Shown piece by piece: positions 28,111 through 59,593 of a DNA stretch of 64,000 bases. The position numbers were made by a program, and so were the translations under genes. The DNA is from Blepharisma stoltei ATCC 30299. Lineage: Eukaryota; Protista; Ciliophora. The notes under the pieces were generated by a model. It had not been told where the DNA came from and made no database searches. It was given only the letters and a program-made list of their open reading frames with translations. Every line of letters begins with the position of its first letter. Position 1 is the stretch's first letter. Location of the stretch: contig CBFDEM010000009.1 of assembly GCA_965603825.1 (NCBI GenBank), forward strand, positions 461,002 to 525,001. The letters are read 5' to 3'.

Positions 28111-29598
28111 ATGAGTGGCATTTTAGAACTTAGTTTCTGTATCTTGGCTTGAATAACGAATGCCTGAGATGCTGTATTCTCAAAGATCTTAAAATTTCCA
28201 AAGAGGTCATGAGCTATAAGTTTGTTTGCCGCATCTCCTATTGCTGCTTATTTTATGTATTCTAAACTAAAAAAAGTCTCTCAAAATCATCAAAGAAAAG
28301 AAGAATATATACCATACTGAGTTTTATATAATTTATTAAACAGAAAAAGTCTCTTTAATGACTTCAACTTATATCAAATAACTACCAGTGAAGAAGAGTC
28401 TGAGAATCTTAAAAGAGAGCTAAAAAATGATTTCGAAGTCATTTCTTCGCCCCCTATTCATATAAAAAAGCCAGGAAGTGAAGATATAGTCCAAGTAGAA
28501 AATAGAGAAGGATTTAAAATAAAAGAAGATAAATACCCAATCTTTATTTGCTGGGAAATTGCGAGGTCTGCGTTAAGTTATTTGAAAACTGATATTTTAC
28601 TCCCAAATAAGCCAGGAGTTATTATTCCATTTTATAAACATAATCAAGGATTCAGGAAAGAATCCAAAGAAGAGCAAGGTGTGTTGTGCATTGAGTCAAA
28701 TTTAGATTCCAAGCATGAAATTATTACAGAAATAAAAAATTGGGCAAAAAATAAGAACCGTCCAGCAGAATTCATAAAACCTCTAGGACTGCCTAATATT
28801 GGAGATACTTGCTATATGAATGCTTTAATTCAAGCATTATCTATCATGCCGCAATTTGATTCAGTCCTTTCTTCGCTTAACTCATCCTTATTTGCATCTC
28901 TTGCAGAAATTCTCACAGCATTGAAAGCGAGAAATAAAAATTTTGATTACAGAAAATATTTGACAGAATTTCAAAGCAAAATTATTGAGAAATTTCATAT
29001 GGTATCATTTATTTAGTTTTTCGCCCATGCTCAGCATGATACTAAAGAGTTATTTAATGTTCTCATTGATGAAATAGTGTCAAATTTTGAAGAGCACCAA
29101 GATAAATTTACAATTTTCACCACAAAAAAGTTCTATTGCATAAAAGGCCATGATCCAGCAGAGAATAAGGAAAGTCAGTTATTTTTAGTAATTCCTGAAA
29201 ATTCTCTTGAGGATATTGATGCTCATGTAAGAAGGGATCATTATTTTAAGGACAAAAATCAAACTTGGTGTGATACTTGTGGGAATATGAGAGATACGGA
29301 ATTAAAAGTTGAGAGCGTGAAATATCCTTTGAATCTAACTATTTATGTTCCTGGGAATGGAGTGATTCGGGAGCCAAATCATAAAATTACACTGGATAAT
29401 GAAAAATATTATTTATATGCAGTTATTTGTCATTCAGGAAGTAATTTATTTGGTCATTATTGGGCACATTTACTTATAGATGGCAAATGGATTGAATGCA
29501 ATGACAGTATTGTTCGGGAAAAATCACCAGATTTATCAAGCTGTTATATGCTTTTTTATTCTAAAGAGTTAATTAAGCCTCACAATAAACTTTCATAA
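28111..29598 (+). CDS. Ubiquitin-specific protease (USP/C19) with hydrophobic N-terminus
   Basis: ATG 28111 is open with TGA=Trp. Cys box GLPNIGDTCYMNALIQ, intron 29002-29016, QHDTKE, His box HSGSNLFGHYWA, WIECNDS. Confidence 0.88.
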
Positions 29599-30104: not shown

Positions 30105-31089
30105 ATGGGCATCATCTCTCCTGTCTTTCGCGACAATGATTATGATTATCCAACCTCACAACGAAAAGGGATTCCAAACATTGGAAATACTTGCTATATG
30201 AATTCTGTCGTCCAAGTATTAGCAAGCACTCCTAATTTCTTATAATAAATTGGAAAAATTATTTCCTTCTTTGATGTACCAATTTCTAATCCACATAAAT
30301 TCAATAAAACACCAACACAGAAAAACTTGGCCATGGAAGAGATTTTACAATTTTTTTCCGAAAAATATAGCAAACTTAGAAAATACAACAAAACCTGAAT
30401 TAGTTTCTTTAAAAAATCTTATACAAGGCTTGAATATAAGCGACAGCTCATCAAACTTATCAGATTTGGTGGTTGATTTTAAAAATGAGATTTCCAAATC
30501 ATACCCAATGGTAATTTTAAAATAGTTTAGAGGTGCTCAAGAAAATGACGCAATAGAATTGCTAGTAATCATACTATCCATGCTAGATGAAAATGAAATG
30601 GTAAAAAACCCATTCAATATCATTTACAACAGAGTATTTAAATGTGAAAATAAACATAAATTTCTTAAAAAAGAAGAAACAAATTTAATCCTGATTCCAA
30701 AGGGAGCCGGCATTCAAGCACACCTGAAAAATGTTAAAAAAGAAGAAGAGTTCATAGGAGACAATAAGCTCTATTGTGAAGAATGCAAAGAAAATAAAGA
30801 TATTATTCTTAAGACAGAAAGAATTGTGTGCCCAAAGATCTTGATTCTTTATATTGCTAATGATGAGAATCACCAAAATAATACTAAATGTGTGAAAAAA
30901 GTTACATTTGGGGAGAATTTGTACTTGATGTATGCTGTTATATGCTATGACTCAACAATTCCGCATTTTTATGCATATGAAAGGATTGGAAAGAAATCTT
31001 GGTGCGAATATAATGATAATTATACAAGTATATCAGATAGTTTTCCTGAGGAAAAAGCTTATCTTTTGTTCTATCGATTAAAAGATTAA
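30105..31089 (+). pseudogene. USP gene interrupted by a 127-bp TA-bounded insertion; otherwise intact
   Basis: Cys box GIPNIGNTCYMNS, then TAA at 30243. Deleting 30243-30369 restores the frame. Family intron 30511-30525 and His box PHFYAY..YNDN are present. Confidence 0.8.
30241..30369. mobile_element. IES-like TA-bounded insertion (127 bp between TA repeats)
   Basis: Begins TATAATAAATTGGAAAAATT and ends AATTTTTTTCCGAAAAATATA. Excision leaving one TA gives TTC TTA GCA AAC (TPNFLANL), collinear with paralogs. Confidence 0.65.
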
Positions 31090-31214
31090 AATTTTATAAT
31101 ATAACGATTTCTGAGTTAGCAAGTTTATTATTATAATTGCAATATTATTATATATAAGTTAAAATTTTATTTATAGTCAAATAATTTTCAGTCTTAGTCT
31201 ATAAGTTGATATAA

Positions 31215-32200
31215 ATTTAGGCACAGCATCACTTTTACTTATAAAAAAGCATATAGGCAGATCATAATCAGGATCTTCTTCATCAACAAAAGAGTCATTA
31301 TATTTGGTCCATCTTTTATCATCTGCATTTAAAGTAAAAGCAATATAATAATCATGCTTCCACTACCATAATAGCATATAACTACAAATAAGTCATACTC
31401 TTATATAAGTCTTTGGAACTCTCCCTTGATTTGAAGTATCCGCAGCATAAAACACCAAATATTCAGGAGGTCCAGGCTATAGCTATTATTTAGTGCTATC
31501 TGCATAATCGCACTAACAAAATATTCATTCCAATTTTGGTTTCTTTTCTTTTATATTTTTTATGCATTTTTCTGAGTTCAGTTTGCTATTCTGAGGTATT
31601 ATTAAAACTAACTGTTGATCTTCCTTTATCATCTTTCACAGATAAATAGATTAATTTATTGTATCAAGAAGAAACTTTGTTCTGCACATGTCTGAAAAAA
31701 ATTCGTCAATTAAAATATTGTAAAATTCTTTGCATTAAAGATAATTATTGTAATAAATTTAAATAGCTCAAGAAATTCGCTTTCTTACTATTTTTCATTT
31801 ATATCTAAGGGATTTCAGTGTAGAAATTTAATTAGATAAATTCTTTGCAATCAATTAGAGCTATAGTTCTAAGCTATATACAATTTACCATTGGATATTT
31901 TTGCTTAAGCGTATTAATTAAGCCTTCAAGATAGTGCTTAAATCTCCTAGGATCCCATTGATAAAATGAGATTAAAAATTTTTGATAAGCATTTAAAAAA
32001 ATTGCTGCTTGATTTTGATACGATGCCTACCAATTTTGGAATACATCCGAGAACTTGAATAGCTGAATTTAAATATCAATTTGAATAATTAATGATTCCA
32101 GCATAGTTTAATCTGCATATTTTCTCTTCTCTAATAATTTTGGGATTCTCTGGGAGAGAGTGAAATATCATTATTATAGCTCGTAAATGATTATAATTCC
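31215..32200 (-). pseudogene. Degraded USP copy of 32776-33891
   Basis: Long nucleotide matches to the adjacent USP (e.g. gatcataatcaggatcttcttcatcaacaaaag, tctttggaactctcccttgatttgaagtatc) with deletions, frameshifts, a mutated Cys box and an intron relic at 31874-31888. Boundaries are approximate. Confidence 0.85.
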
Positions 32201-32775: not shown

Positions 32776-33891
32776 TTAGCTTAATATTCTCTGCTTATAA
32801 AAAAGCATATAGGCGTGATCATAATCAGGATCTTCTTCATCAACAAAAGCGTCATTATATTTAATCCATTTTGCAACAGCATTCAGGGTAAAAGCAATAT
32901 AATGGCCAAAGCTTCCACTGCCATAATAGCATATGACTCCAAACAAGTCATAGTCGTTTCCTTCAGCTCTTATATAGGTCTTTGGAACTCTCCCTTGATT
33001 TGAAGTATCTATAACATAAAATACCAAATATTCAGGCAGATTCAAGCTTTCTGTTATCATGCGAGTCTTAATTATTTCCCCACATTCATTACAAAATAAT
33101 TCATCTTCAAATTTCTTTTCTTTTATATCTTGTATGCATTTTTCTGAGTCCAACTTGTTATTCGGAGGTATTATTAAAAACAACTGTTCCTCTTCCTTTT
33201 GCATCTTGTGACCTTTGCCACAGATAAATAGATTAACTTTTTTTATCAAGAAGAAATTGTGTTCCTCACATGTACCAAAAAATTCGTCAATTAAAATATT
33301 GTAAAGTTCTTTGCAATCATTTTGAGCCTTTATCTTAAACTAAATAAAAACTACGTCAGGATTTTTATTTCTAAGTCCATTAAGTAAGGCCTCTATCTGA
33401 GACTTACTAATACTAGAACGCTGATTTGATAAAACGAGGTTAATAATTTGAGATAAACATTTAAATATGTCGTCTTTTGATTTTGATATAAGATCCACAA
33501 ATTTTGGAATGCACGCAAGTGTTTGAATAGTTGAGTTTAAGTAGCAGGTATTTCCATAATTAGGGATCCCAGCATTGTGAATAAATGCAATTTTTTCATT
33601 TCATCTTTTGGGATTGGAATGCTTACTAACTTCATAGCTAGGACTCCCAGAATTATTAATTGGGTTGCCTTGTGGGGATCTTTCTTCATTCAAATTAGGA
33701 GCGATAAGTTGGCCTTCTTGATTCCGTCCTTCCTGAACAAAAGGTTGACTTTCTTCAGTTGTTGAATGATATCCGCTGCTATTGCTGCTTCGTTTTACAT
33801 ATCGTATCACTATAAGGATAAGTACTACGAGCACAAAGCAGAATACAAGCCCACCCCCAACAATCAGTATTATTTTGACTAAATCATCCAT
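32776..33891 (-). CDS. Membrane-anchored USP protease
   Basis: N-terminal TM (IILIVGGGLVFCFVLVVLILIVI), TGA=Trp at 33601-33603, GIPNYGNTCYLNS, intron 33340-33354, QNDCKE, FGHYIA, YNDA. Confidence 0.9.
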
Positions 33892-35491: not shown

Positions 35492-36601
35492 ATGGACTAT
35501 ATAAAAATGCAACAAGAAAGAGAGCAGAGGAGAAGTCAAAACTGCTGCAATAAATTTTTATTATGTCTCGCATACCTTATATCACGGTTGCGCATTTGCT
35601 GCAGATGGACATGCTATTGAGTAAAAAGATACTGCAGAGGGATATGTGATTTCATATTATGTCTAATATTTTGCAGGGTTAAGAAGCAGAAAGATTCCGA
35701 TAGCGATGGCCAAATAGAAAACCCAAACTATTTCAGGGGAGAAAAAAGCTTAAATTACTTCCATAAAGATGAAAGCGTAAATAATTTTAGCAAAAAAGCA
35801 AATTACCCCAGAAAATTAGGAATCCCAAATTATGGAAACATTTGCTATTTGAACTCAGTTCTACAGGTTTTAGCAAGTACCCCAGAATTTTCCAATTGTT
35901 TAAGCCAAGATTCCGAGATTTCAGGAACTTTATTGAAGATTGTCACCATGATAAATAATCGCTCAGAAACTAATTTTAAGCCAGATATTGATAGATTTTT
36001 AAAAATTATTTATCAAGAAGATCCAAAGGTATTTTCTATACAGTTTGTTTTAGGCAAGCAAAACGACAGTAAAGAAATATTCGCGATTATAATAGATGAA
36101 TGCGCAGAAATTAATAAAAATCTGAAAGATTTATTTTTTATTAGGCAAGATAAAACATTTATTTGCGAACGAAATCATCAAGAAAAAATAGTAGAGGAGA
36201 ATCCATTTTTAGTAGTCCTGAGAAATTTCGACAAAGGTATTAGTAGCTTTATAGATTCTTTGGAACGGACAATCTATTTTAGAGATAGCAATAAAATATA
36301 CTGCAATACCTGCGCAGAATTAAAGGATACTAGTATCACTACAGAGTATAATTTTCCGAAGATTTTAGTTTTTTATTTTGCTGGTGACACCCCAAAGAAA
36401 AGGAGAATTGAGGACTTTGAGTCAATTAAAGGTAAAAATTATGAGCTTTATGGAATGATTTGTTTTTATCCGTCCTATCGCCATTATGTAGCTTTTACAT
36501 TAGATAGTGGAATATGGAGGAAGTATAACGATGAATCTGTGTCTGAGAAGGGGCCTGATTATAATTATGCTTATATGGCATTTTATAGGCTTTTAAAATA
36601 A
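35492..36601 (+). CDS. USP protease with Cys-rich N-terminal extension
   Basis: ATG 35492 is in frame with ORF 35849. CC motifs in the leader, GIPNYGNICYLNS, stop-free intron 36029-36043 (gtattttctatacag), QNDSKE, RHYVA, YNDE. Confidence 0.88.
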
Positions 36602-37283: not shown

Positions 37284-38383
37284 ATGGAATATATAAAGAT
37301 GAAAGATGAAAGGGAAAGAAAAGAACAAGAAGCAAAATTTTTTTTCTAAGCTGAGCTTATGCATAAAATACCTTTTATCGCAAATATGCAAATGCTGCAG
37401 ATATATATGAGATTCCCCTATAGAATGCTGCAGATATATATGAGATTCCCTTATAAAACGCGGCATATATATATATATAATTCCCTTATAAAATGCTATT
37501 TATGGATACTAGATTTCTTATCTCAACTATTTAGCACAAATTTTCCCATAAATAAAGGAAATCAAAGCTATTTTAGCATTCCCAGCAAAGACGGAATTCA
37601 AAACTATGGAAATACGTGCTACTTGAACTCAGTGCTACAAATTTTAGCAAGCACCCCAGAATTTTCTGATTGCTTAATTCCAGATTCGGATTTTTCCAAA
37701 ACTCTATTATCCATCATGAGAATGGTAAATAGAAACTCTCATGCCAATTTCAAGCCAAAAATTGATTTTCTATTAAAGTTAATTTATCGAGCTTATTCAA
37801 ATGTATTTTCTATATAGTTTTATCTCGGAAGGCAAAATGACAGTAAAGAACTGTTTGCAATTATCCTTGATAAGTGTGCAGAAAATAATGAAAATCTGAG
37901 GGAGTTATTTTTCATTAGAAATGAGAAAGTATTTAAATGTAAAAAAAATCATATAGAAGAAAGAGAAGAAGTAAATGCATTTCTAATAGTCCCTAAAAAT
38001 TTTGATAAAGATCTTAGGAAATTAGCAGCTTCATAAATAGCTTAGAGTAGGTAAGATCTTATGGGCTCAATCAGCTATATTGTGCTTCCTGCGAGGAATT
38101 AAAAGATTTTACCATTGATACAGTTTACAAGCTACCTAAGATTTTAGCCATTTATTTTGCCAATAGAAAACAAAAGGACAGATACATTAATGACTCTGTG
38201 AATTTTAAAAGTAAAGAATATAGGCTTTATGGACTAATCTGTTTTTATCCATCTTATCGTCATTACGTAGCTTTTACATTAGATGAGAGAGGATGGTTCG
38301 AATATAATGATAAGTTTGCTCAATTGAAAATGCCTGATTACAATTATGCTTATATGGCTTTTTATAGGTTAAGAAGTAATTAA
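37284..38383 (+). pseudogene. Frameshifted USP paralog of 35492-36601
   Basis: Same MEYIKM-type start, Cys box GIQNYGNTCYLNS and intron 37803-37817. Frameshifts in a T-run and an (AT)n run, and a frameshift plus TAG near 38015-38050. Confidence 0.8.
37391..37496 (+). repeat. 33-bp tandem repeat, about 3 copies
   Basis: aatgctgcagatatatatgagattcccctatag / aatgctgcagatatatatgagattcccttataa / aacgcggcatatatatatatataattcccttataa. Confidence 0.9.
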
Positions 38384-40461: not shown

Positions 40462-41055
40462 ATGGGTGGTTCAAGTAGCAGCCCTTCTCCTTCTTCTTCT
40501 CCTCCTACTCGTCCTACTCCTCTTCCTCCTTCTCCTCCTGTTAAAACAATGATAACAGTCTGTATTATCGATATTGACGGCCGTAAAGCCGAAAAAGACA
40601 TTAACCTTGAATGGGTATTCTCCCTGTGGGCAAAATCCTTGGTAAACGACTATGAAGTGACAGGAAAAAATTTAAGTCTGAAATTTAATGGACTCGAAAT
40701 AACCTATAATGGTAATGAAAGCAAAAAACTCAAAACCTTCGGGTTTTCTTCCAGATCAGATATCTATATTTCCCATGAGCAAAAGGGCTGCAGCACAATC
40801 TCTCTAATAATAAATGACACTTTCACTGGACTTTTAAAAACTGTACAAGCAAAGATTTATTGAACATTTAAAGAATTCTGTGAAGAGCTCGAAAGAAACC
40901 ATGGGATTTATGGGATAATATCTCTACAAAAAGATACCGTTGTCCGAGGCCGTTATATTAGTTTTGGCCCCAGTAAAAATAAAACATTGAGAGAGCTTGA
41001 AGTAAAGAATCTAAATGAAGTATATATTGTTGAGCATATACAAGGAGGACGCTAA
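40462..41055 (+). CDS. Tandem two-domain ubiquitin-like protein, N-terminal Gly, C-terminal HIQGG-R
   Basis: Reads through TGA 40861-40863 to TAA 41053-41055. Two beta-grasp-like repeats (MITVCIIDIDG..LKFNG..LKTFGFSSRSDIYI; ISLIIND..TLRELEVKNLNEVYIVEHIQGG). Confidence 0.75.
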
Positions 41056-41441
41056 TTAAATATGATTTTAATTAAATGACGAAATAAGCCAATTTCTATT
41101 TATAATTTCAACAATATATGTCTTTAATCATTCTAATTTATTTTTATGTATTAAGATATTTTACGGAAAACAAATATAGACTATTTTATTAGAAAATATT
41201 AACATTTATTTTATATTGAAATTATAATAAAGAAAAAATACCAAATTATTTAATGTTTTCTTGAATTAAAAATCATAATATCCAAAATATTTAAATAAAA
41301 AATAAGCCCATTTGAGTTGTTTTAGTTATAATTTTTATAGGCTATTTATATAGAATCTACAAAAATATTAAAGATGGCCACTATTGAAATTAAAATTTTA
41401 TCCATATTAGTCCCTTAATCCAAATTGATATAATATAAAAT

Positions 41442-43010
41442 ATGGCTACTCAAAACTCTAAAGTGAATAACAGTGAAGCGATGAAACTAAATTGCCTTTA
41501 TGAAGACTGAGAAGTTTGCCCAGCAAACTTAGATTCTCATAAGAAACCATCTGATGAACAAAATACTTTCGAAATTAGCAATCTAAAATGTGAACTAGAA
41601 ATAGCAATTAAGGAAAGAGATGAGTATAAAGCTCTGCTAAAAGAAATAGAGCATATCAGAACTGAGCGAAATAGTTATGAGGATACTATTAATACATTAA
41701 GAGATGAGAATGCTGGATTAAAAAAAGCAATTCGTAATATTAAATCGGTTGATACTGATATAGAGAAAATGAAAAAAGATTTTAAAAATTTAAAAGATGA
41801 CCAAAAAAATAATTACAATAGATTTTTTAAGGATTACGAAGACTTTAAAGCCAAAATAGATTTTGCTGTTAAAAGCACTCAAGAAATCATAAAGCAATCA
41901 TCTGAGGAGGAAGATAAAACTCGCGATCAAAAAATTATTAGTTTGGAAGCCAATGTGTATTCTTTGGAATATTTAAAGGCTGAAGAAATTGAAAAAAATA
42001 AAAAATTAAGCGAGAAGATCGAAAAATTGCAGAGAATTAATGGCAAAAAGGATCAAGCAATTTCTGAGTTAAGTCGTAAAAATAATGAAGTCCTGGCAAA
42101 ATTTAAGAGGCTCAAAATTGATTATGATAATTTATTTGAAGAGCATTCAAACCTTAAGAAAAAGAATAATATGTGATGCAATTATTTATTCCAAGGCATC
42201 ACAAATTCTTTAGATAAAAAAAAATTAGACTCTCTTTATTCAACTCCTGTGGGGCTTCCAAACATAGGCCAGACTTGCTACTTAAATTCGCTTCTTCAGG
42301 TCTTAGTTTACTCCCCTGATTTTATAAAGCTGACATATTTTTCAGCAAATAGTCTCCTTCTTTCTATATCAAAGATTGCTGACAATATAAATGCAGGCAG
42401 CTTAGACAGCTGATACCGTTCATTTTACGAAGAATTCATCAGCATGTTTCCACAAGTAATTTTAATATAGGTTCAAGCTTATCGTGAGCAAGACGCAAAA
42501 GAAGTTTTATTCATGATCTTATCCCAAATGAATGAAATTGATCAGAAAAGGCTCTTTAATGTTGTAGTCAATAAAAATTATTCCTGCAGTGAAGGTCATA
42601 TTTTTCCTAATACTGATCTTTCTTTTTTAATAATTGTACAACCCAATTCTAGCATTGAAAATGCACTGCAAGATCTGTATGATGAACAAAACTTCGATGA
42701 ATTGTGATGCCAAGAATGCGGAAGTTTGAGAAAGCAAGCTCGTTATGTGAGTTCTGTAGAATTTCCACAATATTTGATATTTTACACACCTAAAAATAAG
42801 AGAACCAATTTTAGCTTTCCTGAAAGTTTGGAAATCTATGGAGAAGCATATTCGCTATATGCTATAATTTGCCATAAGCAGAATATACTGTATGGACATT
42901 ATCTGGCTTATGTATGCCTCCAAGGAGTTTGGTATAAATGCGATGATTCAAGGGTTAAAAAACAAGCCCCAGATTATAAATCGGCTTATCTTTTATTTTA
43001 CCAAAAATAA
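41442..43010 (+). CDS. USP protease with long N-terminal coiled coil
   Basis: One frame from ATG 41442 with TGA=Trp. GLPNIGQTCYLNS, intron 42456-42470, EQDAKE, YGHYLA, WYKCDDS. Confidence 0.88.
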
Positions 43011-43259
43011 CTAAGCAATAATAGCTCTTATCCTTTAACCTTTTTAGTATAAATCTATTTGAATTGTTAAGAATTAATGATATCTAGCGTGCATTTTATT
43101 TATTATTTTATTATTTCCTCAAAAATCATAGGGCCACGCACTGAGCAGCTAATTTATTTAGATATCATAATTCTTAAATTCCACCTAATTAAATTATTTG
43201 TCTTTAACTATCTATCAATATTGATTTTCGAACTGTTTAGAAAATTCAGACTTTGACCT

Positions 43260-43941
43260 TGCAAGAGCTTTATTTTCTATCATCAGTATTATAAATAGAG
43301 GCTTGTGTGCTGATTTTAAGCCAAAAATAGATTATCTACTAGAGACCTTAATTCAAATAGACTCAAGAGTATTTTTTAAATAGTTTGTTTATGGCAAGGA
43401 AAACGACAGTAAAGAATTATTTGCAATCATGATTGATGAATGCTCAGAAAATAACCCAAAGCTGGAGAATTTATTTTTTATTAGAACAAATAAAATATTT
43501 GAATGCAAAAAAGGCCATAAAGTAAAAAAAGAAGAACCAAGCACATTTCTGATTGTCCCTGAGAAATTTGATCAGAATATTAGTAGCTATATATTTGAAT
43601 CAGAGAAGCCTGATCATTTTAACGGCAAAAATAAGATTTACTGCAGTGTCTGCAAAAGTTTAATGGAAATTACAGTTACTAAAGAGCATATACTTCCTGA
43701 AATTTTAGCGATGTATTTTGTGAGCGAGAATCCAAAGAAAAGGAATATTAGAAACATTGAAATCTTCAAAGGCAAAGAGTATATGCTTTATGGGGTTATT
43801 TGTTTTTATCCACCATATAGCCATTATGTAGCTTCTACGTTAGATAAGGGAACATGAAGAGAATATAATGACAAGTTTGTGTCTGAAAAGGAGCCTGATT
43901 TTAATTATGCATATATGGTATTTTATAGAAAAGTTAAGTAA
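43260..43941 (+). pseudogene. 5'-truncated USP lacking the catalytic Cys box
   Basis: Collinear with 35492-36601 from just after the Cys box. Intron 43369-43383, ENDSKE, SHYVA and YNDK are present. No Cys box or start is visible upstream. Confidence 0.75.
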
Positions 43942-44114
43942 TTCAAAATAATTTATAAATTTATAACTATATTCAAATTTTAAATTGCTACTCTCTCGTT
44001 TAAGCTCTTTATTGATTTTTTTTCTTTTCAAATAATTTAGAAATGTATGGCTGTATCATAATTACAGCTTTTATTCATAAAAATCTAAAATAATAAGGAT
44101 TCTACAAAAATAAA

Positions 44115-44654
44115 ATGTTATTAACGACTTTGACAATTTTAGGTCCAGGCGAAACTGAGACTCACATCTCTATCAAAAGTAATGCCACTTCAAGTAAGTT
44201 AAAAAGAAAGATCCTAAGGCTTTTAAATATAGACGACGTTGTTATGATGCACAATGGCAATGGAATAATGCCAAATAACGTCGACACTCTTCAGCAACTT
44301 GGAATTAATGATAATGATACACTCAATATTCACCCTGTCGCAGCGCCTCGATCAAGACCTGAAGAATCGAAAACTCCTTTGATTTCTTTGATAATCATAG
44401 ACTTGAATCAAAATGAAATCAGTATTAATGCAAATCCAGAATGGAGATTTCAAGAACTTTGGAATGAAATAAAAAGAAAAGGAGTAAATCTCAATGATAA
44501 TGATAGATTATTATATGATAGTTATTTCATTAGTCTTGAAAAGTACAGTGAAATACTTGTCAAGAAAATGCAATTTAAAAGCAAAGGTACTTTGAGGGTT
44601 TTAGACCATTTGAAAGGAGGAGATTTTGTCTGCTTTTATATACCATATAAGTAA
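44115..44654 (+). CDS. Tandem two-domain ubiquitin-like protein, C-terminal HLKGG plus 10-aa extension
   Basis: Ubl1 (TSSKLKRKI..MMHNG..TLQQLGINDNDTLNI) and Ubl2 (ISLIIIDLNQ..LLYD..KGTLRVLDHLKGG), followed by DFVCFYIPYK. Confidence 0.8.
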   Translation: MLLTTLTILGPGETETHISIKSNATSSKLKRKILRLLNIDDVVMMHNGNGIMPNNVDTLQQLGINDNDTLNIHPVAAPRSRPEESKTPLISLIIIDLNQNEISINANPEWRFQELWNEIKRKGVNLNDNDRLLYDSYFISLEKYSEILVKKMQFKSKGTLRVLDHLKGGDFVCFYIPYK

Positions 44655-45330
44655 GCAAAAAATCAGATTATTAACTAATATAGTTTAGAATGTTAAAATT
44701 AGAACTCTTTTTAATTTAATTTTAAATGAAATTTTGACAAGAATGATATTTTCTAAGATTCTTGAATTTATGCTAATAGTAATTTTAAATTTTTCTATTG
44801 ATTAAAAGGAGGAATTTGGTATTGGGCAGCTCATAAATACGCAAAATAAGAAGTTTATAATCTAGAGTAGCTTTGCATCAAGAATAATGATATCAGTTTA
44901 ATTTGGTGCACGAAATTCTAAAGAAATTGAGATATACATAAGCTTATCAGACTTTTATAAGTCTTTATAGAAACAAAATGTCGCAAAGCCTTGAGGACTA
45001 TAATGCCTATTTTCTATAGTGACTCTAATAAATCAATTTTTAAACACTGTGAATGATTTTGAGGGCTGAATTTTAATTCGCTCTATATAAGAAGATTAAA
45101 ATTTAAAATATCTAAATAAAACCCAACCATAAAAGTACTTAATGTGCCGATCTAAATATTGATAAAATTATATTTGTGGCGTCGAATTATCCCTTATAAA
45201 TTAAGCTCATTAGCTTAAACTTATAAAACCTCGATCTCTGATGGCGATGCAAAACCTATTTTCAATTAAATTACATATATCAAAAAAATCATAACTCAAA
45301 ATATGGAACCTTAATAATTAAATTTGTAGA

Positions 45331-45900
45331 ATGGGCGGAAAAAGCAGCACACCTCCTCTCCCAGAAATGGTTACCATTGCAGTAATTGATATAAATTGCT
45401 TTAGAATAAGCAAGCAGGTAAATCTAAATTGACAATTTTCTGCACTAGTTAAAACCTTATCTTTGGAATACAATTTAGATGGCGGGGACTTAACTATTAT
45501 GTATCGAGGTCAAATTATATCAAATTTTGCAAATAAAAGCTATGATCTTAAAACTTTAGAATTTTCAGAAAATTCAGAAATCTATATACAGCATCCCAGA
45601 AAGCAAAGCCAACTCGAGATTATTTCCATAATGATCATTGACACAGAAGAACGATCACAAGCTGTTTCTGTATATTCAAAATGCCTTTATAAAGATTTAT
45701 GTATGCATATTGAATGAAAATATGGGAAAGTGCTCAGGCTGTTGGCTGTGTATTATCGGACAAAGCTTCTTAATTACGATAAGTGCAAAGATAAGAAAAT
45801 CAGTGAAATAAGTACAAATGGAATGCAAAACGGTGATTCATTGAGAATTATGAAACAGTATAATGGCGGGCCAGATAAAGAAAATGTGTTTTGCAATTAA
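45331..45900 (+). CDS. Tandem two-domain ubiquitin-like protein, N-terminal Gly, C-terminal QYNGG plus 9-aa extension
   Basis: ATG 45331 to TAA 45898-45900 is open with two TGA=Trp. MGGKSS start; ends GMQNGDSLRIMKQYNGGPDKENVFCN. Confidence 0.8.
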
Positions 45901-46040
45901 TAAGTATCAGTCAGCTTATTTTAAATTTATTTATTAAAAAATTATAACCGTGATGAAATAATTAACAATAGCTATTAAGATGCTTATTCTTGAAGCTGTA
46001 TAATTGACTAAATAAATATTTTAATAATATTAATATTCTC

Positions 46041-46475
46041 TTATTTCGCGTACTTTCTTGTACAGTTACTGGCTTCTCTATCATACTCATCTTTACTTTT
46101 TAGAAAAATTTCTAGAGCTTCATTTAAATATCCATTTTTTGCATTAGGTTGGCTGAGCACGGCAAAAACCCCATAAAATATTGATCTAACAGAATTGCGT
46201 GAAGACCACCCTGATCCAATTAAATCGCAACAAACATTGCCTTCTGCACTTATGTTTGGATGAAAAATTTTGGTTTTTATAAAAAATTCTGGGGGGTTTT
46301 CTGGATAATTTGAAGGGAAAATAATTTCATAACGAAATCTTCCATTCTCAAAAGGACTGTCTTCGGGACCGATAAAAACGCCTTGCCAATGTTGAAAATC
46401 GAGACCTATCTCTAATGAAACACCTTGAATTGGTTGTTGGTGTAAGGAATTATATTCAAGTATTAGCCTTTCCAT
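46041..46475 (-). CDS. Ubiquitin-conjugating enzyme E2 (UBC fold, divergent)
   Basis: GPEDSPFENGRF, FPSNYPENPP, KIFHPNISAEGNVCCDLI (active-site Cys retained), W-S, TRKYA. Confidence 0.95.
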   Translation of the reverse strand: MERLILEYNSLHQQPIQGVSLEIGLDFQHWQGVFIGPEDSPFENGRFRYEIIFPSNYPENPPEFFIKTKIFHPNISAEGNVCCDLIGSGWSSRNSVRSIFYGVFAVLSQPNAKNGYLNEALEIFLKSKDEYDREASNCTRKYAK

Positions 46476-47328
46476 TTTTATAGAATCTTAAATTGCCAAA
46501 AAAATGATTAAAATCAGGCTGATGTTATGCTTTCGCAGCATACTGTAATGATTGGAGATAGACTTTCGTTTATGATTCAATAAAAAATATCAAATATATT
46601 TATATATAGAAATAAAAGACATATTTCTTACTATCTAGGCTTGTTAGAGTTTTTTAAAGAGTAGTGGGGATGGGTTTCATGCTTGGACAGGAGATGTCAC
46701 CTAATTCTCCTTCAGATCACCTTTACCTTACCATCCTTAATTGTGAGATTGGCTTACTAGTTCTGATATATTTGCCTGAGGGTCAAGGAATAAAGATCTC
46801 TGGTATATCTATGATTTTTGAAAAAATATGGACACAAACCTCCTTACGTGTTGACTCCTTTTCATGTTCGGTTTGATTCTACGCCTCTGCAAGAGTTTGG
46901 GAGAGAAGGGACCTGTATGATTGCAGTTTTATTTGCGTGTATCTTTTAAGAAGCAAAAGCATAGACATTAATGTGCTGGCTCTTATACCTCTTAATAGGC
47001 TTTGAAGACTATAATGCCTAAATTTCTAGTATGACTCTAAATAATCAATTTTAAACATTCTGAATGATTTTTAGGGATAAATTTCTATATAAGATGAGCT
47101 AAATAAAACGAACACAAACGTGCCGTATATGCCGATCTAATTTTTGATAAAATTATATTCGTGGCGTGGAAATTATCCCTTATAAATTAAGCGCACTAAC
47201 TTTAAGTTTGTAAACTTCTTCTAAAATCTTGATGTCTGATTACCATGTAAAGCCTATTTTAAATTAATATCATTATATCAAAAAAATCATAATTCAAAGT
47301 ATAAAACTTTAATAATAAATTTGTAGAA

Positions 47329-48023
47329 ATGGGCGGAAAAAGCAGTACCAGCGCACCTTCTCCTCCTCCTAGTCCTCCTGAAATGGTTACAATTGCAGTA
47401 ATTGATATAAATTGCTTTAGAATAAGCAAGCAGGTAAATCATAATTGAAAATTTTCTGCACTAGTTAAAGAATTATCTCAGGAATTCGATATAGGCAGTC
47501 ATGACTTAACCATTATGTTCCAAGGTCAGGCTATATAATTAATTTGGCATATTTTGATTCCCTTTGATCTGTCAAGAATATATTAGCTAGCATAAGCCCC
47601 ATATACACCCTTCTAATAGGCTAAAATAAATTATGATTATCCAGCCTACTAAGTATTCAGCAGCTTGTCATATCAAATTCTAGAAATCAAAATTATGTCC
47701 TTAAGACTTTAGAATTATCAGAAAATTCAGAAATCTATATACATGCCAGGAAGCAAAAAGAGCCCAATAAAATTACCATAATGATCATTGACCAAGAAGA
47801 ACGAACAAAAATTATTTCTGTATACTCAGAATGCCTTTATAAAGATTTATGTATACATATTGAATGAAAATATGGGATAGTGCTCAGGCGGTTGACTGTG
47901 CTATTAGGGACATGGCTTCTTAATTATGATAAGTGAAAAAATAAGAAAATCAGTAAAATAGGTAAAAAAGGAATCCAAAACGGTGATTCATTGAGAATTA
48001 TGAACCAAAATATTGGCAGGTAA
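47329..48023 (+). pseudogene. diUbl paralog of 45331-45900 interrupted by a 137-bp TA-bounded insertion; ends GR* instead of GG-extension
   Basis: MGGKSS start, TAA at 47536. Deleting 47536-47672 gives a continuous frame to TAA 48021-48023. Confidence 0.8.
47534..47672. mobile_element. IES-like TA-bounded insertion (137 bp between TA repeats)
   Basis: Absent from the paralog (CAA ATT ATA TCA AAT versus CAG GCT ATA [insert] TCA AAT). Begins TATAAT, ends TCATA, flanked by an ATAT direct repeat. Confidence 0.7.
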
Positions 48024-48188
48024 GATAAAGATCATATTTTTTGCAATTAATTGAAGTAGCAGCAAAATTATTTTAAATTTATTTATTAAAAATTAAGAAG
48101 CTGTGATGAAATAATTGATAATAATAGCTATTAGCATGCTTATTCTTGAAACTGCTTATAATTAGCTAAATGAATATTTAACTTTATC

Positions 48189-48591
48189 TTATTCGCGTAT
48201 TTTCTTGTCCAATTTCTGGCTTCTCTAGCATCTCATCTTTACTTTTTAGAAAAATTTCTAGAGCTTCATTTACATATCCATTTTGTGCATTGGGCTTGCT
48301 GAGCACTGCGAAAACCCCATAAAATATTGATCTAGCAGAATTTCGTGAAGATCATCCTGATCCAATTAAATTGCAGCAAACATTACCGTTCTCATCTATG
48401 TTTGGATGGAAAATTCTTGTTTTAATATAAAATTCTGGTGGTCTTTCGGATAATTTCATAACGAAATCTTCCATTTTCAAAAGGACTGCCTTCGGGCTAA
48501 TAAAAACGCTGAAAATCGATGCTTGGCTCTAATGAAACACCTTGAATTGGTTGTTGGTGTAGGAATTATATTCAACTTTTAGCTTTTCCAT
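48189..48591 (-). pseudogene. Frameshifted E2 copy
   Basis: Collinear with 46041-46475 (IFHPNIDENGNVCCNLIGSG) but with several small deletions and frameshifts. Confidence 0.88.
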
Positions 48592-50701
48592 TTTTATAAA
48601 ATCTTAAATTGCCACAAAAATGATTAAAATCAGGCTGATGTTCTGCTTTCGCAGGATACTTTAATGGCTAGAGAAAAACTTTGGTTTATGATTCAATAAA
48701 AATAGTCAAAAATAATTATATAGAAATAAAAGACACATGCAGTGTGATCATGGAGGGATTTTCTCAAGAAATACAAATTAAGGTATAGCCTATCCTAAAA
48801 AAATTGATAAAATGGCTAATTTAATATATTATTAAGTCTAGCTCGCGTATTTCTTTGTCCATTTCTATATGCGTTAAATAGTGGCTATGATAGCCTTCTG
48901 GTGCAATAGAAAGTCTTTAAAGTGAGATAAATTGGAAAAGACTAAAATCAAAATAAAAAGACAGTTATCTATATCAGTGTAGTTTTGGCAGCTTCCTTTT
49001 ATTAGAAATATAGACTTATACTATACTCTTTGGAATCATAGGCTATTCTCTGTTTTATCATGGGGATCTGCCGGATCACAAGACAATGTCTTTTTATGCC
49101 TGAGAAGGCACTTCATCATCTATGGCTCTTATAGACTAATTCCTAGGATCAAGCTACCCTCATGGTCTGATGTGTGACTATTGTTGAAATTTTATAATTT
49201 AAAAGTTAAGTGTGTAATAATATTCAGCAAAATTTTGCTTACTTCCCCTGCTTAATTAGAGAGCCAAGCTATTTGTTTTTAATAATTATCTGTATTTAAC
49301 TGATAAGTCTTTACAGCATATCAAGTACAAATATTTTAACACTTTAAAAAATTATTATTAAATTTTATATTAAGTTTGCTTATTCTACTTGATATTTCAA
49401 TATTGTCTTATTTCTTTTATAAAAATGTAGCCCTTATCACTTAATATATCTTAAAGATCAATTTCTGATCTTTTCAATTAAATTCTAGGCTTTAAGGTCT
49501 TATCCATTAACCATAGCATTTGTATATACCCCCAAAATTAAACTTTTACTAGAAGCAAAACAGCCACAGATCCTTTTTCTTTGCAAATCTTTAAGGGAAT
49601 ATTTCCATCAGTTATTTTATTTCAGACTTTAATAAAAACTAATCATTGAAATCAAAATATGAAATGTTTAATTGTGGTATAAAAATAAGTTTATATTCCA
49701 ATATTTTAATGCTATCATCTTATTTTAAGTCCCATATATAGCTCGAGCTTCATAAACTTTACCTCCTCCCACAATCGGAAAATTAATTGGCACTGCTTTT
49801 GGCTCCTGACTATTATTAGCATTAAGTTTGATATCTTAGCAAATAAATTACAGTAAGAATGGAAAATAACTTATAGAAACTGAAGGAATAGAAGATCTGT
49901 TTCTAATTTCAGTTATGGACATAGTTCTCCAAAAAGAGGTTTCTTTAAAATATCAATAGATAAAGAATTTAAACATGATTTTCCTAGCCTTTTTAAAAAG
50001 CTGAATAAAAAAGACAAGAAAGAATTCTAAAAAGATATAATTCCAAAAATTTGTCCACAAAAAAATTTTTTTGAGCATTTTTTTCTTGAACTTTGGCTTT
50101 TATTAATTGCTTCAGTTGATGCAAGGCCAAGCTGGAAAGAGAATTAAATTACTTCATTGCTTGAGTATCAGTGATAAAAAAGTAAATAATATCTGTATGA
50201 GTTTATTTATAGCTTTGAATAAAAGTATCCCAATTATTATTGTAGAATGCCATTGCTTTGTATTTTGCCAAGATAAATATCAAAATATTATATATCTGAG
50301 TGTAGAATCGCAGATAGCAACACTTTGAAATATCATTTATTGGTTTAACTATATTCATTGCTAGCTAGCATGCTAGATTGGTTTATTTCCAATTTTAATT
50401 TATAAAACTAGGCACTTTTTATAATTATAATTAATATAATTTTATTGTGAAATAAATAATGAAATTTAGACTAGTACTGCGCAAGCTCTGTGCTGAATGA
50501 ATTTTTACCGAAAATATTTATTTATGATTTAGCATTAGATGGTTATTGTTACAAAAAGTTAATTAATAGCATATCAGAATTTTCCTATTTAAAACCTGTA
50601 TAAAAAATAATCATTGTCTTATTCTGAACAAAATTTTCATCAAAGCTAAAAAAATATAAAATTCTCTTGAAAATTTATGATTAACTACTATTAATAAAAA
50701 T

Positions 50702-51271
50702 ATGGCTGATAGCGAAAGGTAATTCTCATTCAGCTACCAAACCCTCAAAATTACCCTCTTAGGCAGTTCCCAATCTGGAAAATCCAACCTTTTGTGCCGC
50801 TATTCTGACAACAGCTTTATTGAGGACTATCGCCCAACAATAGGAGTTGAATTTGTAATTTTTATTCAGAGATCTAAGCCTTATGATTGGAAAGGCAAAA
50901 CTATAAGAGTTTTAATTTGGGACACAGCAGGCCAAGAAAGATATAAGGCCATATCCGCATCTTATATGAGAGGAAGTCATGGCTCTGCAATCATTTTTGA
51001 CCTGTCAAGAAGAGAAAGCTTTGACAAAGTTGGAAGCTTTATAAGAGAAATTCAAGAGTCAAATAATCAAGATAAGCCAGTTATTTTGATTGGAAATAAA
51101 GCAGATTTAGAAGGATATAGGCAAATTTCATTTGAAGAAGCTAAACAATTCGCAGATAGCATAGGAGCAAGCTATGCTGAAACGTCTGCATTGACAGGTT
51201 TTAACGTTGATGATGCTTTTAGACTGCTTATAAGTGAGGCTGCTTCAAAAGCTTTGCTAGAAAATCCATAG
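50702..51271 (+). CDS. Rab-family small GTPase lacking C-terminal prenylation cysteines
   Basis: Introns 50719-50733 and 50855-50869. GSSQSGKS, PTIGVEF, WDTAGQERY, GNKAD, ETSA; ends SKALLENP. Confidence 0.92.
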
Positions 51272-51999
51272 TATTTTAATTAGCATTCTTTTATTTTACG
51301 TTATTTGAGCCTTTGGTTATGACTTGAACAGATTCTGTCCAAGCTACATATCTTGATCATTGGATTGCTAGTTTTGTGTATTCAACTGCTTTCTCCAAAT
51401 TTTGGACCTATTTAGCTTTGTAATCTCTATAACTTGTTTAATGATCTGTTAAGAAATTAAATTCTTTAATTTTTAGGTAAAATTGGTCATGCACCTTAAT
51501 TAATGATTCTCTAGCTCAGCTGAAATATAAATTCATTTATCACAGATTATTGCAAATGTCGGCTAATAGAGGAACTCTTCTACATTATCGAAGAATGCCA
51601 GATATATTGCATTAGGAACCCATCATGCTAATAAATATCTATTTAATTCAGTTAGCTTTAAGTTCTATTAATTTAAATTGAGAATTTTTTAGGAAGATTT
51701 TTATAGTTTTATTGAAAATTCTCTTCAATATTAATATAGTTGTTATATTAATTTATTCTATTGCCTTCAAATTAGCTAAATATGATTATTTATAAATAAA
51801 AATAAAGGCCTTAAGAATACTTATACGTTCCTAAATAAAATAATTCACAAAATTTTATTAATAAATTCAGATCACTTGGAAAATTGACTAATTTCATAAT
51901 CGAAATTAATTAAAAATTAATAGCTTTATAAATTTTCCTTCTTCAATAACTAAAATTAAAAGGAAATTAACTGTTTTCTGTTGCACTCCATTATATAAA

Positions 52000-52542
52000 A
52001 AGTGGCCTGTTATCTATAGTAATTTCCACTCAATGCAAATGAAGTAAAAATTGCTCTCTTGAGCTATTCCCAAGCTTATAAAACTACCTTGTTTCTAATC
52101 TTTATGATAATCATTTGTCTAATCTTACTACCTAGCATATTTGGCTGATTTTTCAATTTTTATTTTAGGAGTCCAAGCTTACTATTAAGGCACGCTATAT
52201 AAATGTTCATATTTGGGATATAGTAAGTGAAGAAGGCTCCAATCCGGAATTATGGACTTTTAATGAAGTCGATGACTGCTATTCTTTTTGATGTTTCTAG
52301 AGCGAAAGCTACAATGAGCTTGGAAGCATTTTCAATTGAATATGGAACTCGAAAATCAAGATAAGTCAATTATTTTGATAGAAAAAAACGCTGACTTAGA
52401 AGAAAGACAAGCTATAGCTCAAGATGGGAATTATTTAGCGAGAGCAAAACGGGCTACTTATTTTGAAACATCTGCATTGGCAAAAAAAAGTATTGATACA
52501 GCATTTAGAACATTGATAAATGAGATTGCAGAGAGAGGATAG
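52000..52542 (+). pseudogene. Degenerate Rab paralog
   Basis: Residual VHIWDI, FDVSR, ILIEKNADL and YFETSA motifs with frameshifts and a destroyed P-loop. The 5' boundary is approximate. Confidence 0.75.
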
Positions 52543-53059
52543 AACGAGCTGGAAAATGAAAAAGCAAGTAGATAATTATTATTACTTATAATTGCTAAGA
52601 GGAGATTAGATAATCTTAGTTTAAGTAAAATAAATAGATACGAAACCATTTTGATAGGACTACACTTTGAAATATATAAATAATTCTATTAACTTAAACA
52701 GGCATAATTTGCTTTTTATATTAATATCTTCAAAGATTAATAAACTTCAGTATTTAAATAGAAAATGCTAATATAAATTTTTTAAAGAGTTTTAAGCCGA
52801 TGCTTGATTTTCAATAGATTGAGAGAATCTATGAATGCCATTATCTTTAGTATATTAGTTGCATTTTCGGCTGTTAAATCTTCTTTTGTGATATTTTTAT
52901 CTATTTGGGATACAAAAAAGGTTATATCGATTACTAAGTTAAAAACCGAAGTTATGTCTTTTTAAATGTTTTTAAAAAAATATATTTAATAAATATTTTA
53001 TTGAATACACATATATTAATATTTTGCGATATTAATTTTGAAATATCAAAATTCAATAA

Positions 53060-53593
53060 ATGAAAAAAGAGGTGCACAAATCAATTATTGTCATAGGAGA
53101 ATATAGATCTGGAAAAGCATCAATTATAACTCGATATTGCTCTAACGAGATTTATGGCAGAAAATCTGACTGATTTGAGTCTGGCTTCGTATTAATTATA
53201 TAGAAAAGCAAAAATATTACTCAACGTCATCAAACAATCAAACTGATGGTTTGAAAAACACCTGTTAAGCCCGCATTTAGAGATTTCTCCTCCGACTATT
53301 ATTCAGGGCCATATGGGTGACTCGTTGTATTCGATTTGACGAACCGAGAGTCGTTTGATTATATATCTTTTTGAGTTGGTGAAATTCGAAAGCATGGAAA
53401 TCAAGCCAATCCGATTTTTATAGTCGGAAATAAATCAGATTTAAAAAAGAAGAGGCAAGTTTCATATGAAGAAGCTAAAATGTTAGCAGATAGCTTTAAT
53501 GTGCCTTATGCAGATGTTTCAGTACTATATAATCACAATCTTGATACTGTATTTAGCATTCTTTTGAAAGAGATGACATTTAACAAAAAATAA
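53060..53593 (+). CDS. Divergent Rab-like protein, probable pseudo-GTPase (absent from ORF track)
   Basis: Open from ATG 53060 to TAA 53591-53593 with intron 53189-53203 and four TGA=Trp. G1 GEYRSGKA, G3 [W]KTPVK, VFDLTNRESF, GNKSDL, RQVSYEEA. Confidence 0.8.
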
Positions 53594-56027: not shown

Positions 56028-56669
56028 TATAACAATATTGAAAATAGCTTTACTTCAGAAATTAATTTATTAAAGCTTTCATGGAAAATCAACTACTAGT
56101 GACTTTATATTCTGGAATCACTTAAAAGTATTTGAAGTGCTTTATATAGCATGCCTTCTTTAATCTAGGCATATTAATACAGAAGCAAGACAATTTATTT
56201 ATAAATAATATAAAATAAATTTCAATTAATTATAAAGCAATTTTTTAAAAATGATGAACCACACAAGAAAATCAGCCCGAGCCTGAAATAAGATGAGATT
56301 CATGAGTGTCTTTTCATTTAAATTCTTATTTAGTCATAAAGATGAGTAGCAAGCAATGTCATATGATGGAGATTTTAATAAAAATATGGATATTTAAGCT
56401 AAAAACTGTGCAGTATGCATCAACGGATGATTGGGGAGTTTAGAAATTGCTGAAGATATCATTTTCCCTATAGTACATAAGATTCAATTACCAAACTATA
56501 ATATTGATAGAGCACTATTCAATCTCAAATTACTAGAAAGAAGACCTCCTACATCCTTTAGAGAAAACATATTGCGAAAAATAATAAAAAAATTTCCATT
56601 AATATAATTAAAGTAAAATAGTAATTATTAATTATCTAAACTACTTTACCTTAATCTTTGATTATACCT

Positions 56670-58865: not shown

Positions 58866-59593
58866 TATAACAATATGAGACTCTGGAAAATAGCTTTACT
58901 TCAGAAATTAATTTATTAAAATTTCATATAAAACCAACTACTTTGACTTTATATTATGAAATCGCTTAAAAGTATTTGAAGTGCTTTATATAATATGCCT
59001 TCTTTAATCTAAGCATATTTACAGAAACAAGACGCTTTATTTTAAATAATATAAAGTAAACTTCAATTAATTATAATGCAATTTTTATAAACATGATGAA
59101 CTACAGCAAGAAAATCAGCCTGAGCCTGAAATAAAATGAGATTCATCTGTGTCTTTCATTTAAATTCTTATCTAATTTAAAGACGAAGAGCAAGCAATGG
59201 CACATGATAAGGCTTTTAATAAAAAAATTGGATATTTAAGCTAAAAATTGTGCAGCATGCATCAACGGATGTTTGGGGGTGCCATAAGAAATTGTTGAAG
59301 ATATCATTATTTCTATAGAACAGAGGATTCTATTCCAAACTATCATATTGATAGAGCACTTTTCAATCTCAAATTACTAGAAAGAAGACCTCCTGCATCC
59401 TTAATATCAGTTTTTTTATGATGAAATTTATTGAAATATAGTAATAAAATTTTAAAAATAATGGGCAACTTTTTTATTGTTCTTTTTACAAAGATTCTCT
59501 TTGACCAAAAAGGTTCTTTATAATATAAATATTTTTTCTGACGAATTAATATATATTATTAAACAGTTAACCTAATTTTTCTAATTAAATGCT

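What the first reader, a model, noticed from the sequence alone, without database searches (positions are those of the whole stretch)
40462..48591. Candidate ISG15-like system: clustered two-domain ubiquitin-like modifiers with a linked E2, embedded in a USP array
Seen: four genes (40462, 44115, 45331, 47329) each encode two tandem ubiquitin-like domains. Once TGA is read as Trp, the three intact ones end in Gly-Gly plus a short extension (HIQGG-R, HLKGG-DFVCFYIPYK, QYNGG-PDKENVFCN) despite very low mutual identity. Three start with MG (possible myristoylation). A divergent E2 lies tail-to-tail with one diUbl and the pair was duplicated as a unit; in the duplicate both partners decayed (GG to GR, E2 frameshifted). 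USP genes are interleaved and adjacent. Established: ISG15 is a di-Ubl precursor trimmed after GG, with a dedicated E2 (UBE2L6) and USP (USP18); eukaryotes rarely cluster such components. Inference: this is a lineage-specific modifier, conjugase and protease module, possibly membrane-tethered and defence-related. No E1 or E3 lies in the cluster.
Basis: partly seen in the sequence, partly recalled or inferred. Interest (0 to 1): 0.9.

Follow-up and report, generated by a model that had tools for sequence, protein, structure and literature searches.

The report
Ciliate's private ubiquitin-like tagging system
The ciliate Blepharisma stoltei keeps, in repeated gene clusters, its own set of ubiquitin-like tags with a matching activating enzyme, carrier enzymes and removing proteases, apparently a second protein-tagging pathway built independently of the vertebrate antiviral tag ISG15.

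Summary
The window is the end of contig 9 of the Blepharisma stoltei macronuclear genome (UGA=Trp). Genes A, B and C encode tandem beta-grasp proteins ending in GG plus a tail; D and the second E2 are decayed duplicates. Related free-standing mono-, di- and tri-Ubls occur at 8 loci, 7 of them inside arrays of one compact USP family. A 16-member E2 clade (13 in clusters) and a divergent UBA1 clade sit in the same clusters; the E1s lie on C11 and C15/C35, none in this window. GG ends 16 of 19 terminal domains and 0 of 11 internal ones. The cluster E1s lost the Asp that reads ubiquitin Arg72 (kept in 116 of 117 other E1s) and part of the acidic UFD patch; most Ubls lack Arg72 and the E2s lack the matching basic motif. 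Best reading: an orthogonal, lineage-specific Ubl cascade, analogous but not homologous to ISG15. Conjugation, targets, E3 and a defence role are untested; no relatives were found outside this species. The scan's first readers also noted sister clusters on other contigs.

The parts
40462..41055 (+). di-Ubl A, 197 aa, Ser/Pro-rich N-terminus with MGGSSS start, two beta-grasp domains, GG + 1 residue
   Evidence: low-depth contigs of probable RNA runs
44115..44654 (+). di-Ubl B, 179 aa, GG + 10 residues
   Evidence: Pfam Rad60-SLD 5e-8 on domain 1; Atlas structure hits over both halves
45331..45900 (+). di-Ubl C, 189 aa, MGGKSS start, GG + 9 residues; germline copy has a 139-bp TA-bounded IES near 45518-45520
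46041..46475 (-). E2a, 144 aa, divergent UBE2D/Ubc4-type conjugating enzyme with HPN motif and catalytic Cys; member of the cluster E2 clade
47329..48023 (+). di-Ubl D, decayed duplicate of C; ends GR-stop; interrupted by a retained IES-like insert
47534..47670 (.). 137-bp TA-bounded insert in D, homologous to the IES excised from C, present in the macronuclear assembly
48181..48591 (-). E2b, pseudogene copy of E2a with several frameshifting deletions
44988..48738 (.). tandem duplication of the upstream region + di-Ubl + E2 unit (44988-46624 and 46999-48738)
   Evidence: self-BLAST
41442..43010 (+). intact compact USP, 517 aa, coiled-coil N-terminus, Cys and His boxes, 15-nt intron 42456-42470
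43180..43941 (+). USP pseudogene in this strain: Cys box decayed, His-box half intact
35492..36601 (+). intact compact USP, 364 aa, intron 36029-36043; 63% identical to a USP in the C15 cluster
37350..38383 (+). broken USP copy (stop and frameshift near 38030-38050)
32776..33891 (-). intact USP with N-terminal hydrophobic anchor, intron 33340-33354
31210..31900 (-). decayed copy of the 32776-33891 USP (approximate limits)
   Evidence: self-BLAST
30105..31089 (+). USP interrupted by an insert after the Cys box
28111..29598 (+). intact USP, 490 aa, intron 29002-29016; left end of the array

Best explanation
The locus is one of several dispersed, mostly chromosome-end clusters that encode a second ubiquitin-like conjugation pathway private to Blepharisma. 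Each Ubl is made as a precursor; a cluster USP trims the tail after GG (inferred); the cluster-clade E1, supplied in trans from C15/C35, adenylates the exposed Gly and takes it on its catalytic Cys (inferred from intact motifs); it hands the Ubl to cluster-clade E2s such as E2a, which attach it to targets, perhaps without a canonical E3; cluster USPs remove it again. Insulation from the housekeeping ubiquitin pathway comes from matched changes at the Ubl position 72 / E1 crossover loop and at E2 helix A / E1 UFD. Shown: folds, GG placement, catalytic motifs, clades, co-location, purifying selection, interface substitutions. Inferred: processing, thioester transfer, conjugation, orthogonality. 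Likeliest role (about 0.4): a fast-evolving response to intracellular bacteria or viruses.
For: Beta-grasp folds with GG in ubiquitin register. GG at 16/19 terminal and 0/11 internal domains, Fisher p 7e-6, not independent; integral di-Ubl proteins on C41 lack GG. 7 of 8 free-standing Ubl loci lie within 10 kb of the USP family, which covers about 1.1% of the genome. E2 clade 100/99 support, 13 of 16 in clusters. E1 clade 100% support, 48% identical to housekeeping UBA1, all copies inside clusters, two head-to-head with a clade E2. Asp591 kept in 116/117 other E1s, Q/W/Q in cluster E1s; Leu569 117/117 versus E/K/E. UFD Glu1004 and Asp1014 equivalents replaced; E2 helix-A basic motif lost in 12/13 clade E2s and kept in 5/5 canonical ones. 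dN/dS 0.15-0.30 for intact E1 and E2 pairs, 0.20-0.68 for Ubl pairs.
Against: No biochemical test. No E3 in any cluster seen. Only one distinct intact cluster E1 (C15, duplicated on C35); C11b lacks the catalytic Cys and C11a is frameshifted before the UFD. Many members are pseudogenes. Expression evidence is thin: contigs of depth 2-5 on A and two USPs, none on B, C or E2a, and the runs are only guessed to be RNA. Three mono-Ubls plus one remnant keep Arg at position 72. No second species shows the system.
Confidence: 0.7

Rival explanations
1. The Ubls are never conjugated. They act free, as substrates, decoys or regulators of the cluster USPs and E2s, with GG serving only as a protease site.
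For: USPs far outnumber the other parts; two of three distinct cluster E1s are broken or lack the Cys; C8, C12 and C55 show Ubl + USP without E1 or clade E2.
Against: An intact E1 with ATP-binding and catalytic motifs and a dozen E2s with catalytic Cys are kept under purifying selection beside the Ubls; the E1 pocket changed in step with Ubl position 72.
Confidence: 0.1
2. Neutral birth-and-death debris: ubiquitin-pathway genes were once neighbours and were copied together by subtelomeric duplication; co-location reflects history, not a shared function.
For: Chromosome-end positions, a 20-kb 99.9% duplicate (C15/C35), many pseudogenes, a retroelement next to the C15 cluster, a polyubiquitin gene beside the C18 cluster. 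The loci are not independent, so co-location p-values overstate.
Against: GG survives at about 20% domain identity and only in terminal domains; dN/dS below 1 for intact pairs; substitutions at otherwise invariant specificity residues with catalytic residues intact.
Confidence: 0.1
3. Conjugation is real but not orthogonal: the cluster E1 and E2s are extra ubiquitin enzymes, or the Ubls run on housekeeping UBA1.
For: The E1 keeps full UBA1 architecture and Gln576/Tyr586; E2s are UBE2D-like; some mono-Ubls keep Arg72.
Against: UBA1 is strictly selective for Arg72 through Asp591 (PMC3731359); A, B and C have His, His and Gln there; cluster E1s lost Asp591; clade E2s lost the basic helix-A motif that binds the UBA1 acidic patch (PMC6656757).
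Confidence: 0.1
4. Same mechanism as the best explanation but a non-defence role (sexual development, encystment, membrane or granule traffic). Not exclusive of the best explanation's mechanism.
For: Membrane-targeting hints on some members (MG starts; USPs with hydrophobic N-termini); no pathogen link was tested.
Against: Rapid turnover, strain differences that are mostly amino-acid changing (6/6 in A, 10/15 in a USP; small, low-depth sample) and low basal signal fit conflict genes better than core developmental genes.
Confidence: 0.3

Closest known systems
ISG15 / UBA7 / UBE2L6 / USP18 (vertebrates)
   Same: Di-Ubl precursor trimmed after GG; E1 is a UBA1 paralog of similar distance (UBA7 45%, PMC9722776; here 48%); dedicated E2 and USP-class protease.
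   Different: No LRLRGG; 9-13% identity; about 20 modifiers of one to three domains, a dozen E2s and dozens of USPs instead of one each; genes are physically clustered; E1 derives from a ciliate UBA1; no interferon; no E3 found.
FAT10 / UBA6 / USE1
   Same: Tandem Ubl with C-terminal GG and a second UBA1-type E1.
   Different: FAT10 is made with a free GG and shares UBA6 with ubiquitin (own knowledge; PMC13065764 abstract for dual activation); here most members have tails, and the E1 scores higher to UBA1 than to UBA6.
Bacterial BilABCD and Bub operons
   Same: [quoted passage not shown]
   Different: All parts here are eukaryotic types (full UBA1 architecture, UBE2D-like E2, USP with a spliceosomal intron), on both strands, so clustering is convergent, not a transfer.
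Polyubiquitin and integral Ubl-domain proteins
   Same: Tandem beta-grasp domains.
   Different: Polyubiquitin has GG after every unit; integral Ubls have no conserved terminal GG. Here GG is confined to the last domain.

Membership tests
Type I ubiquitin-like modifier | beta-grasp fold | tested here: met
   (A modelled; B by Atlas and Pfam; C by homology to A)
Type I ubiquitin-like modifier | C-terminal Gly-Gly in ubiquitin 75-76 register, free or followed by a short tail | tested here: met
   16/19 terminal versus 0/11 internal domains; register
Type I ubiquitin-like modifier | cognate E1 with adenylation motifs and catalytic Cys | tested here: met
   C15/C35 E1 intact, Cys aligned to yeast C600; pairing with these Ubls is inferred
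Type I ubiquitin-like modifier | cognate E2 with HPN motif and catalytic Cys | tested here: met
Type I ubiquitin-like modifier | covalent attachment to targets | not testable with these tools
   needs biochemistry or proteomics
ISG15 | two tandem beta-grasp domains made as a precursor | tested here: met
ISG15 | C-terminal LRLRGG | tested here: not met
   EHIQGG, DHLKGG, KQYNGG; motif per PMC9722776
ISG15 | specific similarity to ISG15 over other Ubls; UBA7-type E1 | tested here: not met
   matches to di-Ub, ISG15, FAT10 and OASL tie at 9-13%; E1 scores UBA1 > UBA6 > UBA7 and groups with ciliate UBA1s
ISG15 | interferon or infection induced | not testable with these tools
   no raw RNA reads available
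FAT10 | free GG without a tail; activation by UBA6 | tested here: not met
   tails on A, B, C; cluster E1 is closer to UBA1 than UBA6
Bil/Bub bacterial operons | E1, E2, Ubl and DUB encoded at one locus | tested here: met
   C11 and C15 clusters; not in this window, which lacks E1
Bil/Bub bacterial operons | bacterial-type components | tested here: not met
   eukaryotic UBA1, UBE2D-like and USP families
USP (UCH, PF00443) proteases | Cys box and His box | tested here: met
   intact in four window USPs

The most novel reading that the evidence does not exclude
A single-celled eukaryote has independently built an ISG15-like innate immune pathway: a fully orthogonal E1-E2-Ubl-USP cascade with about 20 different tags, organised in operon-like islands, working without canonical E3s and diversifying under pathogen pressure.
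Probability: 0.3. Interest if true: 0.92.

Novelty: new variant of a known kind. Interest (0 to 1): 0.82.

Why it matters
The list of eukaryotic Ubl conjugation pathways is short, and the ones with their own UBA1-type E1 and a tandem modifier (ISG15, FAT10) are known from animals. An independent origin in a ciliate would show that 'duplicate UBA1, change the Arg72 pocket and the UFD, pair it with new tags' is a repeatable route, and gives a natural test of the rules of E1-Ubl and E1-E2 specificity. Physical clustering of all parts parallels bacterial antiviral Ubl operons, suggests that neighbourhood can be used to find such pathways in other protists, and offers a candidate for the little-known innate defence of ciliates. 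A natural orthogonal cascade could also be a tool.

Tried and rejected
Single-sequence AlphaFold of B failed (pLDDT 36). Pfam finds nothing for A or C pieces. Word-based searches with B and E2a found only this genome. The family profile against 1.84 billion proteins returned B. stoltei members, polyubiquitins and unrelated multi-Ubl proteins; two of these lay on 1-kb contigs without context. A metagenome scan with the cluster E1s gave one canonical, fungal-like E1; the Ubl alignment was too variable to scan. Viral contigs gave only generic E2s at 30-39%; a viral origin is not supported. No mention of ubiquitin in the genome paper or its held supplement; literature searches found no report of the system. 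Rejected: ISG15 or FAT10 homology; polyubiquitin-type precursor; family-wide myristoylation; reading D's break as simple decay only (it holds a retained IES). The second-exon USP dN/dS row was out of frame and is ignored. The 48-letter piece laid on E2a continues as E2b sequence and is not counted for E2a.
Full report
SOURCE. The assembly has 41,464,486 bases in 64 contigs and the window is G000:C9:461002-525001, ending in AGGGTGTT telomere repeats. Size, contig number, CCCTAACA repeat, UGA=Trp and 15-16-nt introns match Blepharisma stoltei ATCC 30299 (PMC9942806); neighbouring proteins are named B. stoltei in the databases.

OBSERVATION. The four genes, their ends and the duplication are as described. 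A (197 aa), B (179 aa) and C (189 aa) end in GG plus 1, 10 and 9 residues. Pfam sees only B's first domain, but a model of A built from eight family rows, with no ubiquitin in the alignment, has pLDDT 83 and two beta-grasp patterns. It matches linear di-ubiquitin at E 7e-12 and ISG15, FAT10 and OASL about equally, at 9-13% identity; each half aligns to Ubl domains at Z 10-11.6, and in the 8q7r_U match the first Gly falls on ubiquitin G75. The Atlas gives the same answer for A and B. D is a copy of C (70% identical) with GR-stop and a 137-bp TA-bounded insert; the same element (139 bp) is present in C in a second B. stoltei assembly, GCA_914767885.1, which carries extra inserted segments and which I take to be the IES-containing one, and is absent from C here. 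E2b has several frameshifts. The window's USP array runs from 28.1 to 43.9 kb; four copies are intact and at least four are broken; seven share one 15-nt intron position.

THE SYSTEM IS GENOME-WIDE. Searching with A and B led to sister loci. A family profile finds free-standing Ubls on C1, C8, C9, C11, C12, C15 (duplicated at 99.9% on C35), C18 and C55: one-, two- and three-domain forms. Seven of these eight loci lie within 10 kb of the same compact USP family, which with flanks covers about 1.1% of the genome; the binomial p is tiny but the loci share ancestry, so it shows non-random co-location, not independent origins. The closest relatives of E2a form a 16-member clade (100/99) apart from Ubc4, Ubc13, Ubc2 and other canonical E2s; 13 are in the C9, C11, C15 and C18 clusters, three stand alone. 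UBA1-type E1 genes lie in the C11 and C15/C35 clusters, two of them head-to-head with a clade E2. They form a long-branched clade (100%), 48% identical to the housekeeping UBA1 on C28, placed beside heterotrich UBA1s (quick trees, long branch, so the age of the split is unsure). The C15 cluster alone holds one E1, six or more E2s, four GG-ended Ubls and about ten USPs. The C15/C35 E1 is intact; C11b has lost the catalytic Cys and C11a is frameshifted before the UFD.

SIGNS OF A WORKING, INSULATED CASCADE. (1) GG ends 16 of 19 terminal domains and none of 11 internal ones, although terminal domains are mostly 16-34% identical; the three exceptions are D, a decayed C55 copy and a C18 tri-Ubl ending GC. 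Some seeds were picked by eye for GG, but members found by GG-free queries or by the profile also carry it. Two zinc-finger proteins with integral di-Ubl on C41 lack GG. (2) In yeast Uba1, ubiquitin Arg72 is read by Gln576 and Asp591 (PMC3731359). Aligned through 5l6h, Asp591 is kept in 116 of 117 other E1s and is Q, W, Q in the cluster E1s; Leu569 is invariant elsewhere and E, K, E here. A, B and C have His, His and Gln at position 72; most family members lack Arg there, a few mono-Ubls keep it. (3) The UFD acidic patch (Glu1004, Asp1008, Asp1014, Glu1016) binds a basic motif on E2 helix A (PMC6656757). The Glu1004 and Asp1014 equivalents are I/M and Q/L in the cluster E1s (mapping by alignment), and 12 of 13 clade E2s lack the third basic residue that all five canonical E2s keep. 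(4) dN/dS between intact paralogs is 0.15-0.30 for E1 and E2 and 0.20-0.68 for Ubls; C versus decayed D gives 0.80. From my own knowledge, the UBE2D E3-binding residues (Phe62, Pro95-Ala96) and the Asp117 position are also changed in most clade E2s, a weak hint of unusual E3 use or acceptor chemistry.

EXPRESSION. Only contigs of four runs guessed to be RNA were available. On 40480-46470 they fall, at depth 2-5, only inside coding parts of A and two USPs; none lie on B, C or E2a. They differ from the assembly at 6 sites in A, all amino-acid changing, and 15 in the USP copy, 10 changing; the sample is small and low-depth. This shows presence at best.

MECHANISM. Most likely: USP trims the tail, the C15/C35 E1 activates the Ubl, a clade E2 takes it and attaches it to targets, USPs reverse it. 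This window supplies tags, one E2 and proteases and depends on an E1 in trans. Confidence 0.7 for a dedicated cascade. The role is open; defence is my best guess (about 0.4) from turnover, chromosome-end location, strain divergence and the parallels with ISG15 and bacterial Bil. No E3 was seen in the fetched parts of any cluster.

COMPARISON. It works like ISG15/UBA7/UBE2L6/USP18 but is not ISG15: the LRLRGG motif is absent, ISG15 is vertebrate-only (PMC9722776), and the E1 is a ciliate UBA1 offshoot. Its layout recalls bacterial Bil/Bub operons (PMC10557695, PMC11601603) but the parts are eukaryotic. I found no paper describing it and no homologue outside this species; word-based and length-limited searches can miss distant kin.

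LIMITS AND STEPS LEFT OUT. Proteins with TGA codons and spliced USPs were searched piece by piece by reference; the joined C and D proteins and joined USPs were not sent to search or fold tools. A was used whole through its database id. Reads were laid on under 6,000 letters, leaving D and E2b out. The scan's first readers noted the sister clusters on other contigs; I had found them before that look-up, and those notes are not counted as evidence.

VERDICT. Real, larger than reported, undescribed as far as I can find: a new variant of Ubl conjugation cascade. Interest 0.82.

Noticed in passing
window 16753-18165 +: Gene with RING-like Cys motifs, an IBR domain (6e-5) and a PARP catalytic domain (1.6e-7): possible RBR-type E3 fused to an ADP-ribosyltransferase, 10 kb from the USP array and separated by housekeeping genes.
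   Followed up: partly
window 53826-61831 -: Three tandem pentapeptide + WD40 genes next to the telomere; a relative (E 2.5e-25) on C41 is flanked by two zinc-finger + coiled-coil + di-Ubl genes without GG (L150:784-1938, L150:4589-5851).
   Followed up: partly
window 50703-53593 +: Three Rab-like GTPase copies, one intact (Pfam Ras 5e-49), the others degraded or divergent.
   Followed up: no
window 46658-47014 +: 118-codon frame of slightly higher GC between the two duplicated units, absent from the first unit; origin unknown.
   Followed up: no
G000:C11:1175847-1178870 and G000:C55:255875-258763: Two full-length UBA1-type E1 genes without the catalytic Cys: candidate pseudo-E1 proteins.
   Followed up: partly
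L022:6640-7344 (C18): Tri-Ubl made of three nearly identical repeats of a cluster mono-Ubl, no internal GG, ending GC: a recent mono-to-multi-domain step; a true polyubiquitin gene with a divergent last unit lies 5 kb away.
   Followed up: partly
L015:462-3189 (C15): Non-LTR retroelement-like ORFs (RVT_1 1e-11) at the inner edge of the C15 cluster.
   Followed up: no
P0202, P0216, P0232, P0235, P0240, P0261 (L063, L064): Unrelated family of three- to four-domain Ubl proteins from metagenome contigs with a conserved C-terminal xIGA/xVGAA end; contigs too short for context.
   Followed up: partly
G000:C35:754372-775000 versus C15:667859-688507: 20.6-kb chromosome-end duplicate at 99.9% identity containing the intact E1; may be a true recent duplication or an assembly repeat.
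   Followed up: partly
window 30241-30369: Insert that breaks the USP at 30105 after its Cys box; possibly a second retained IES.
   Followed up: no
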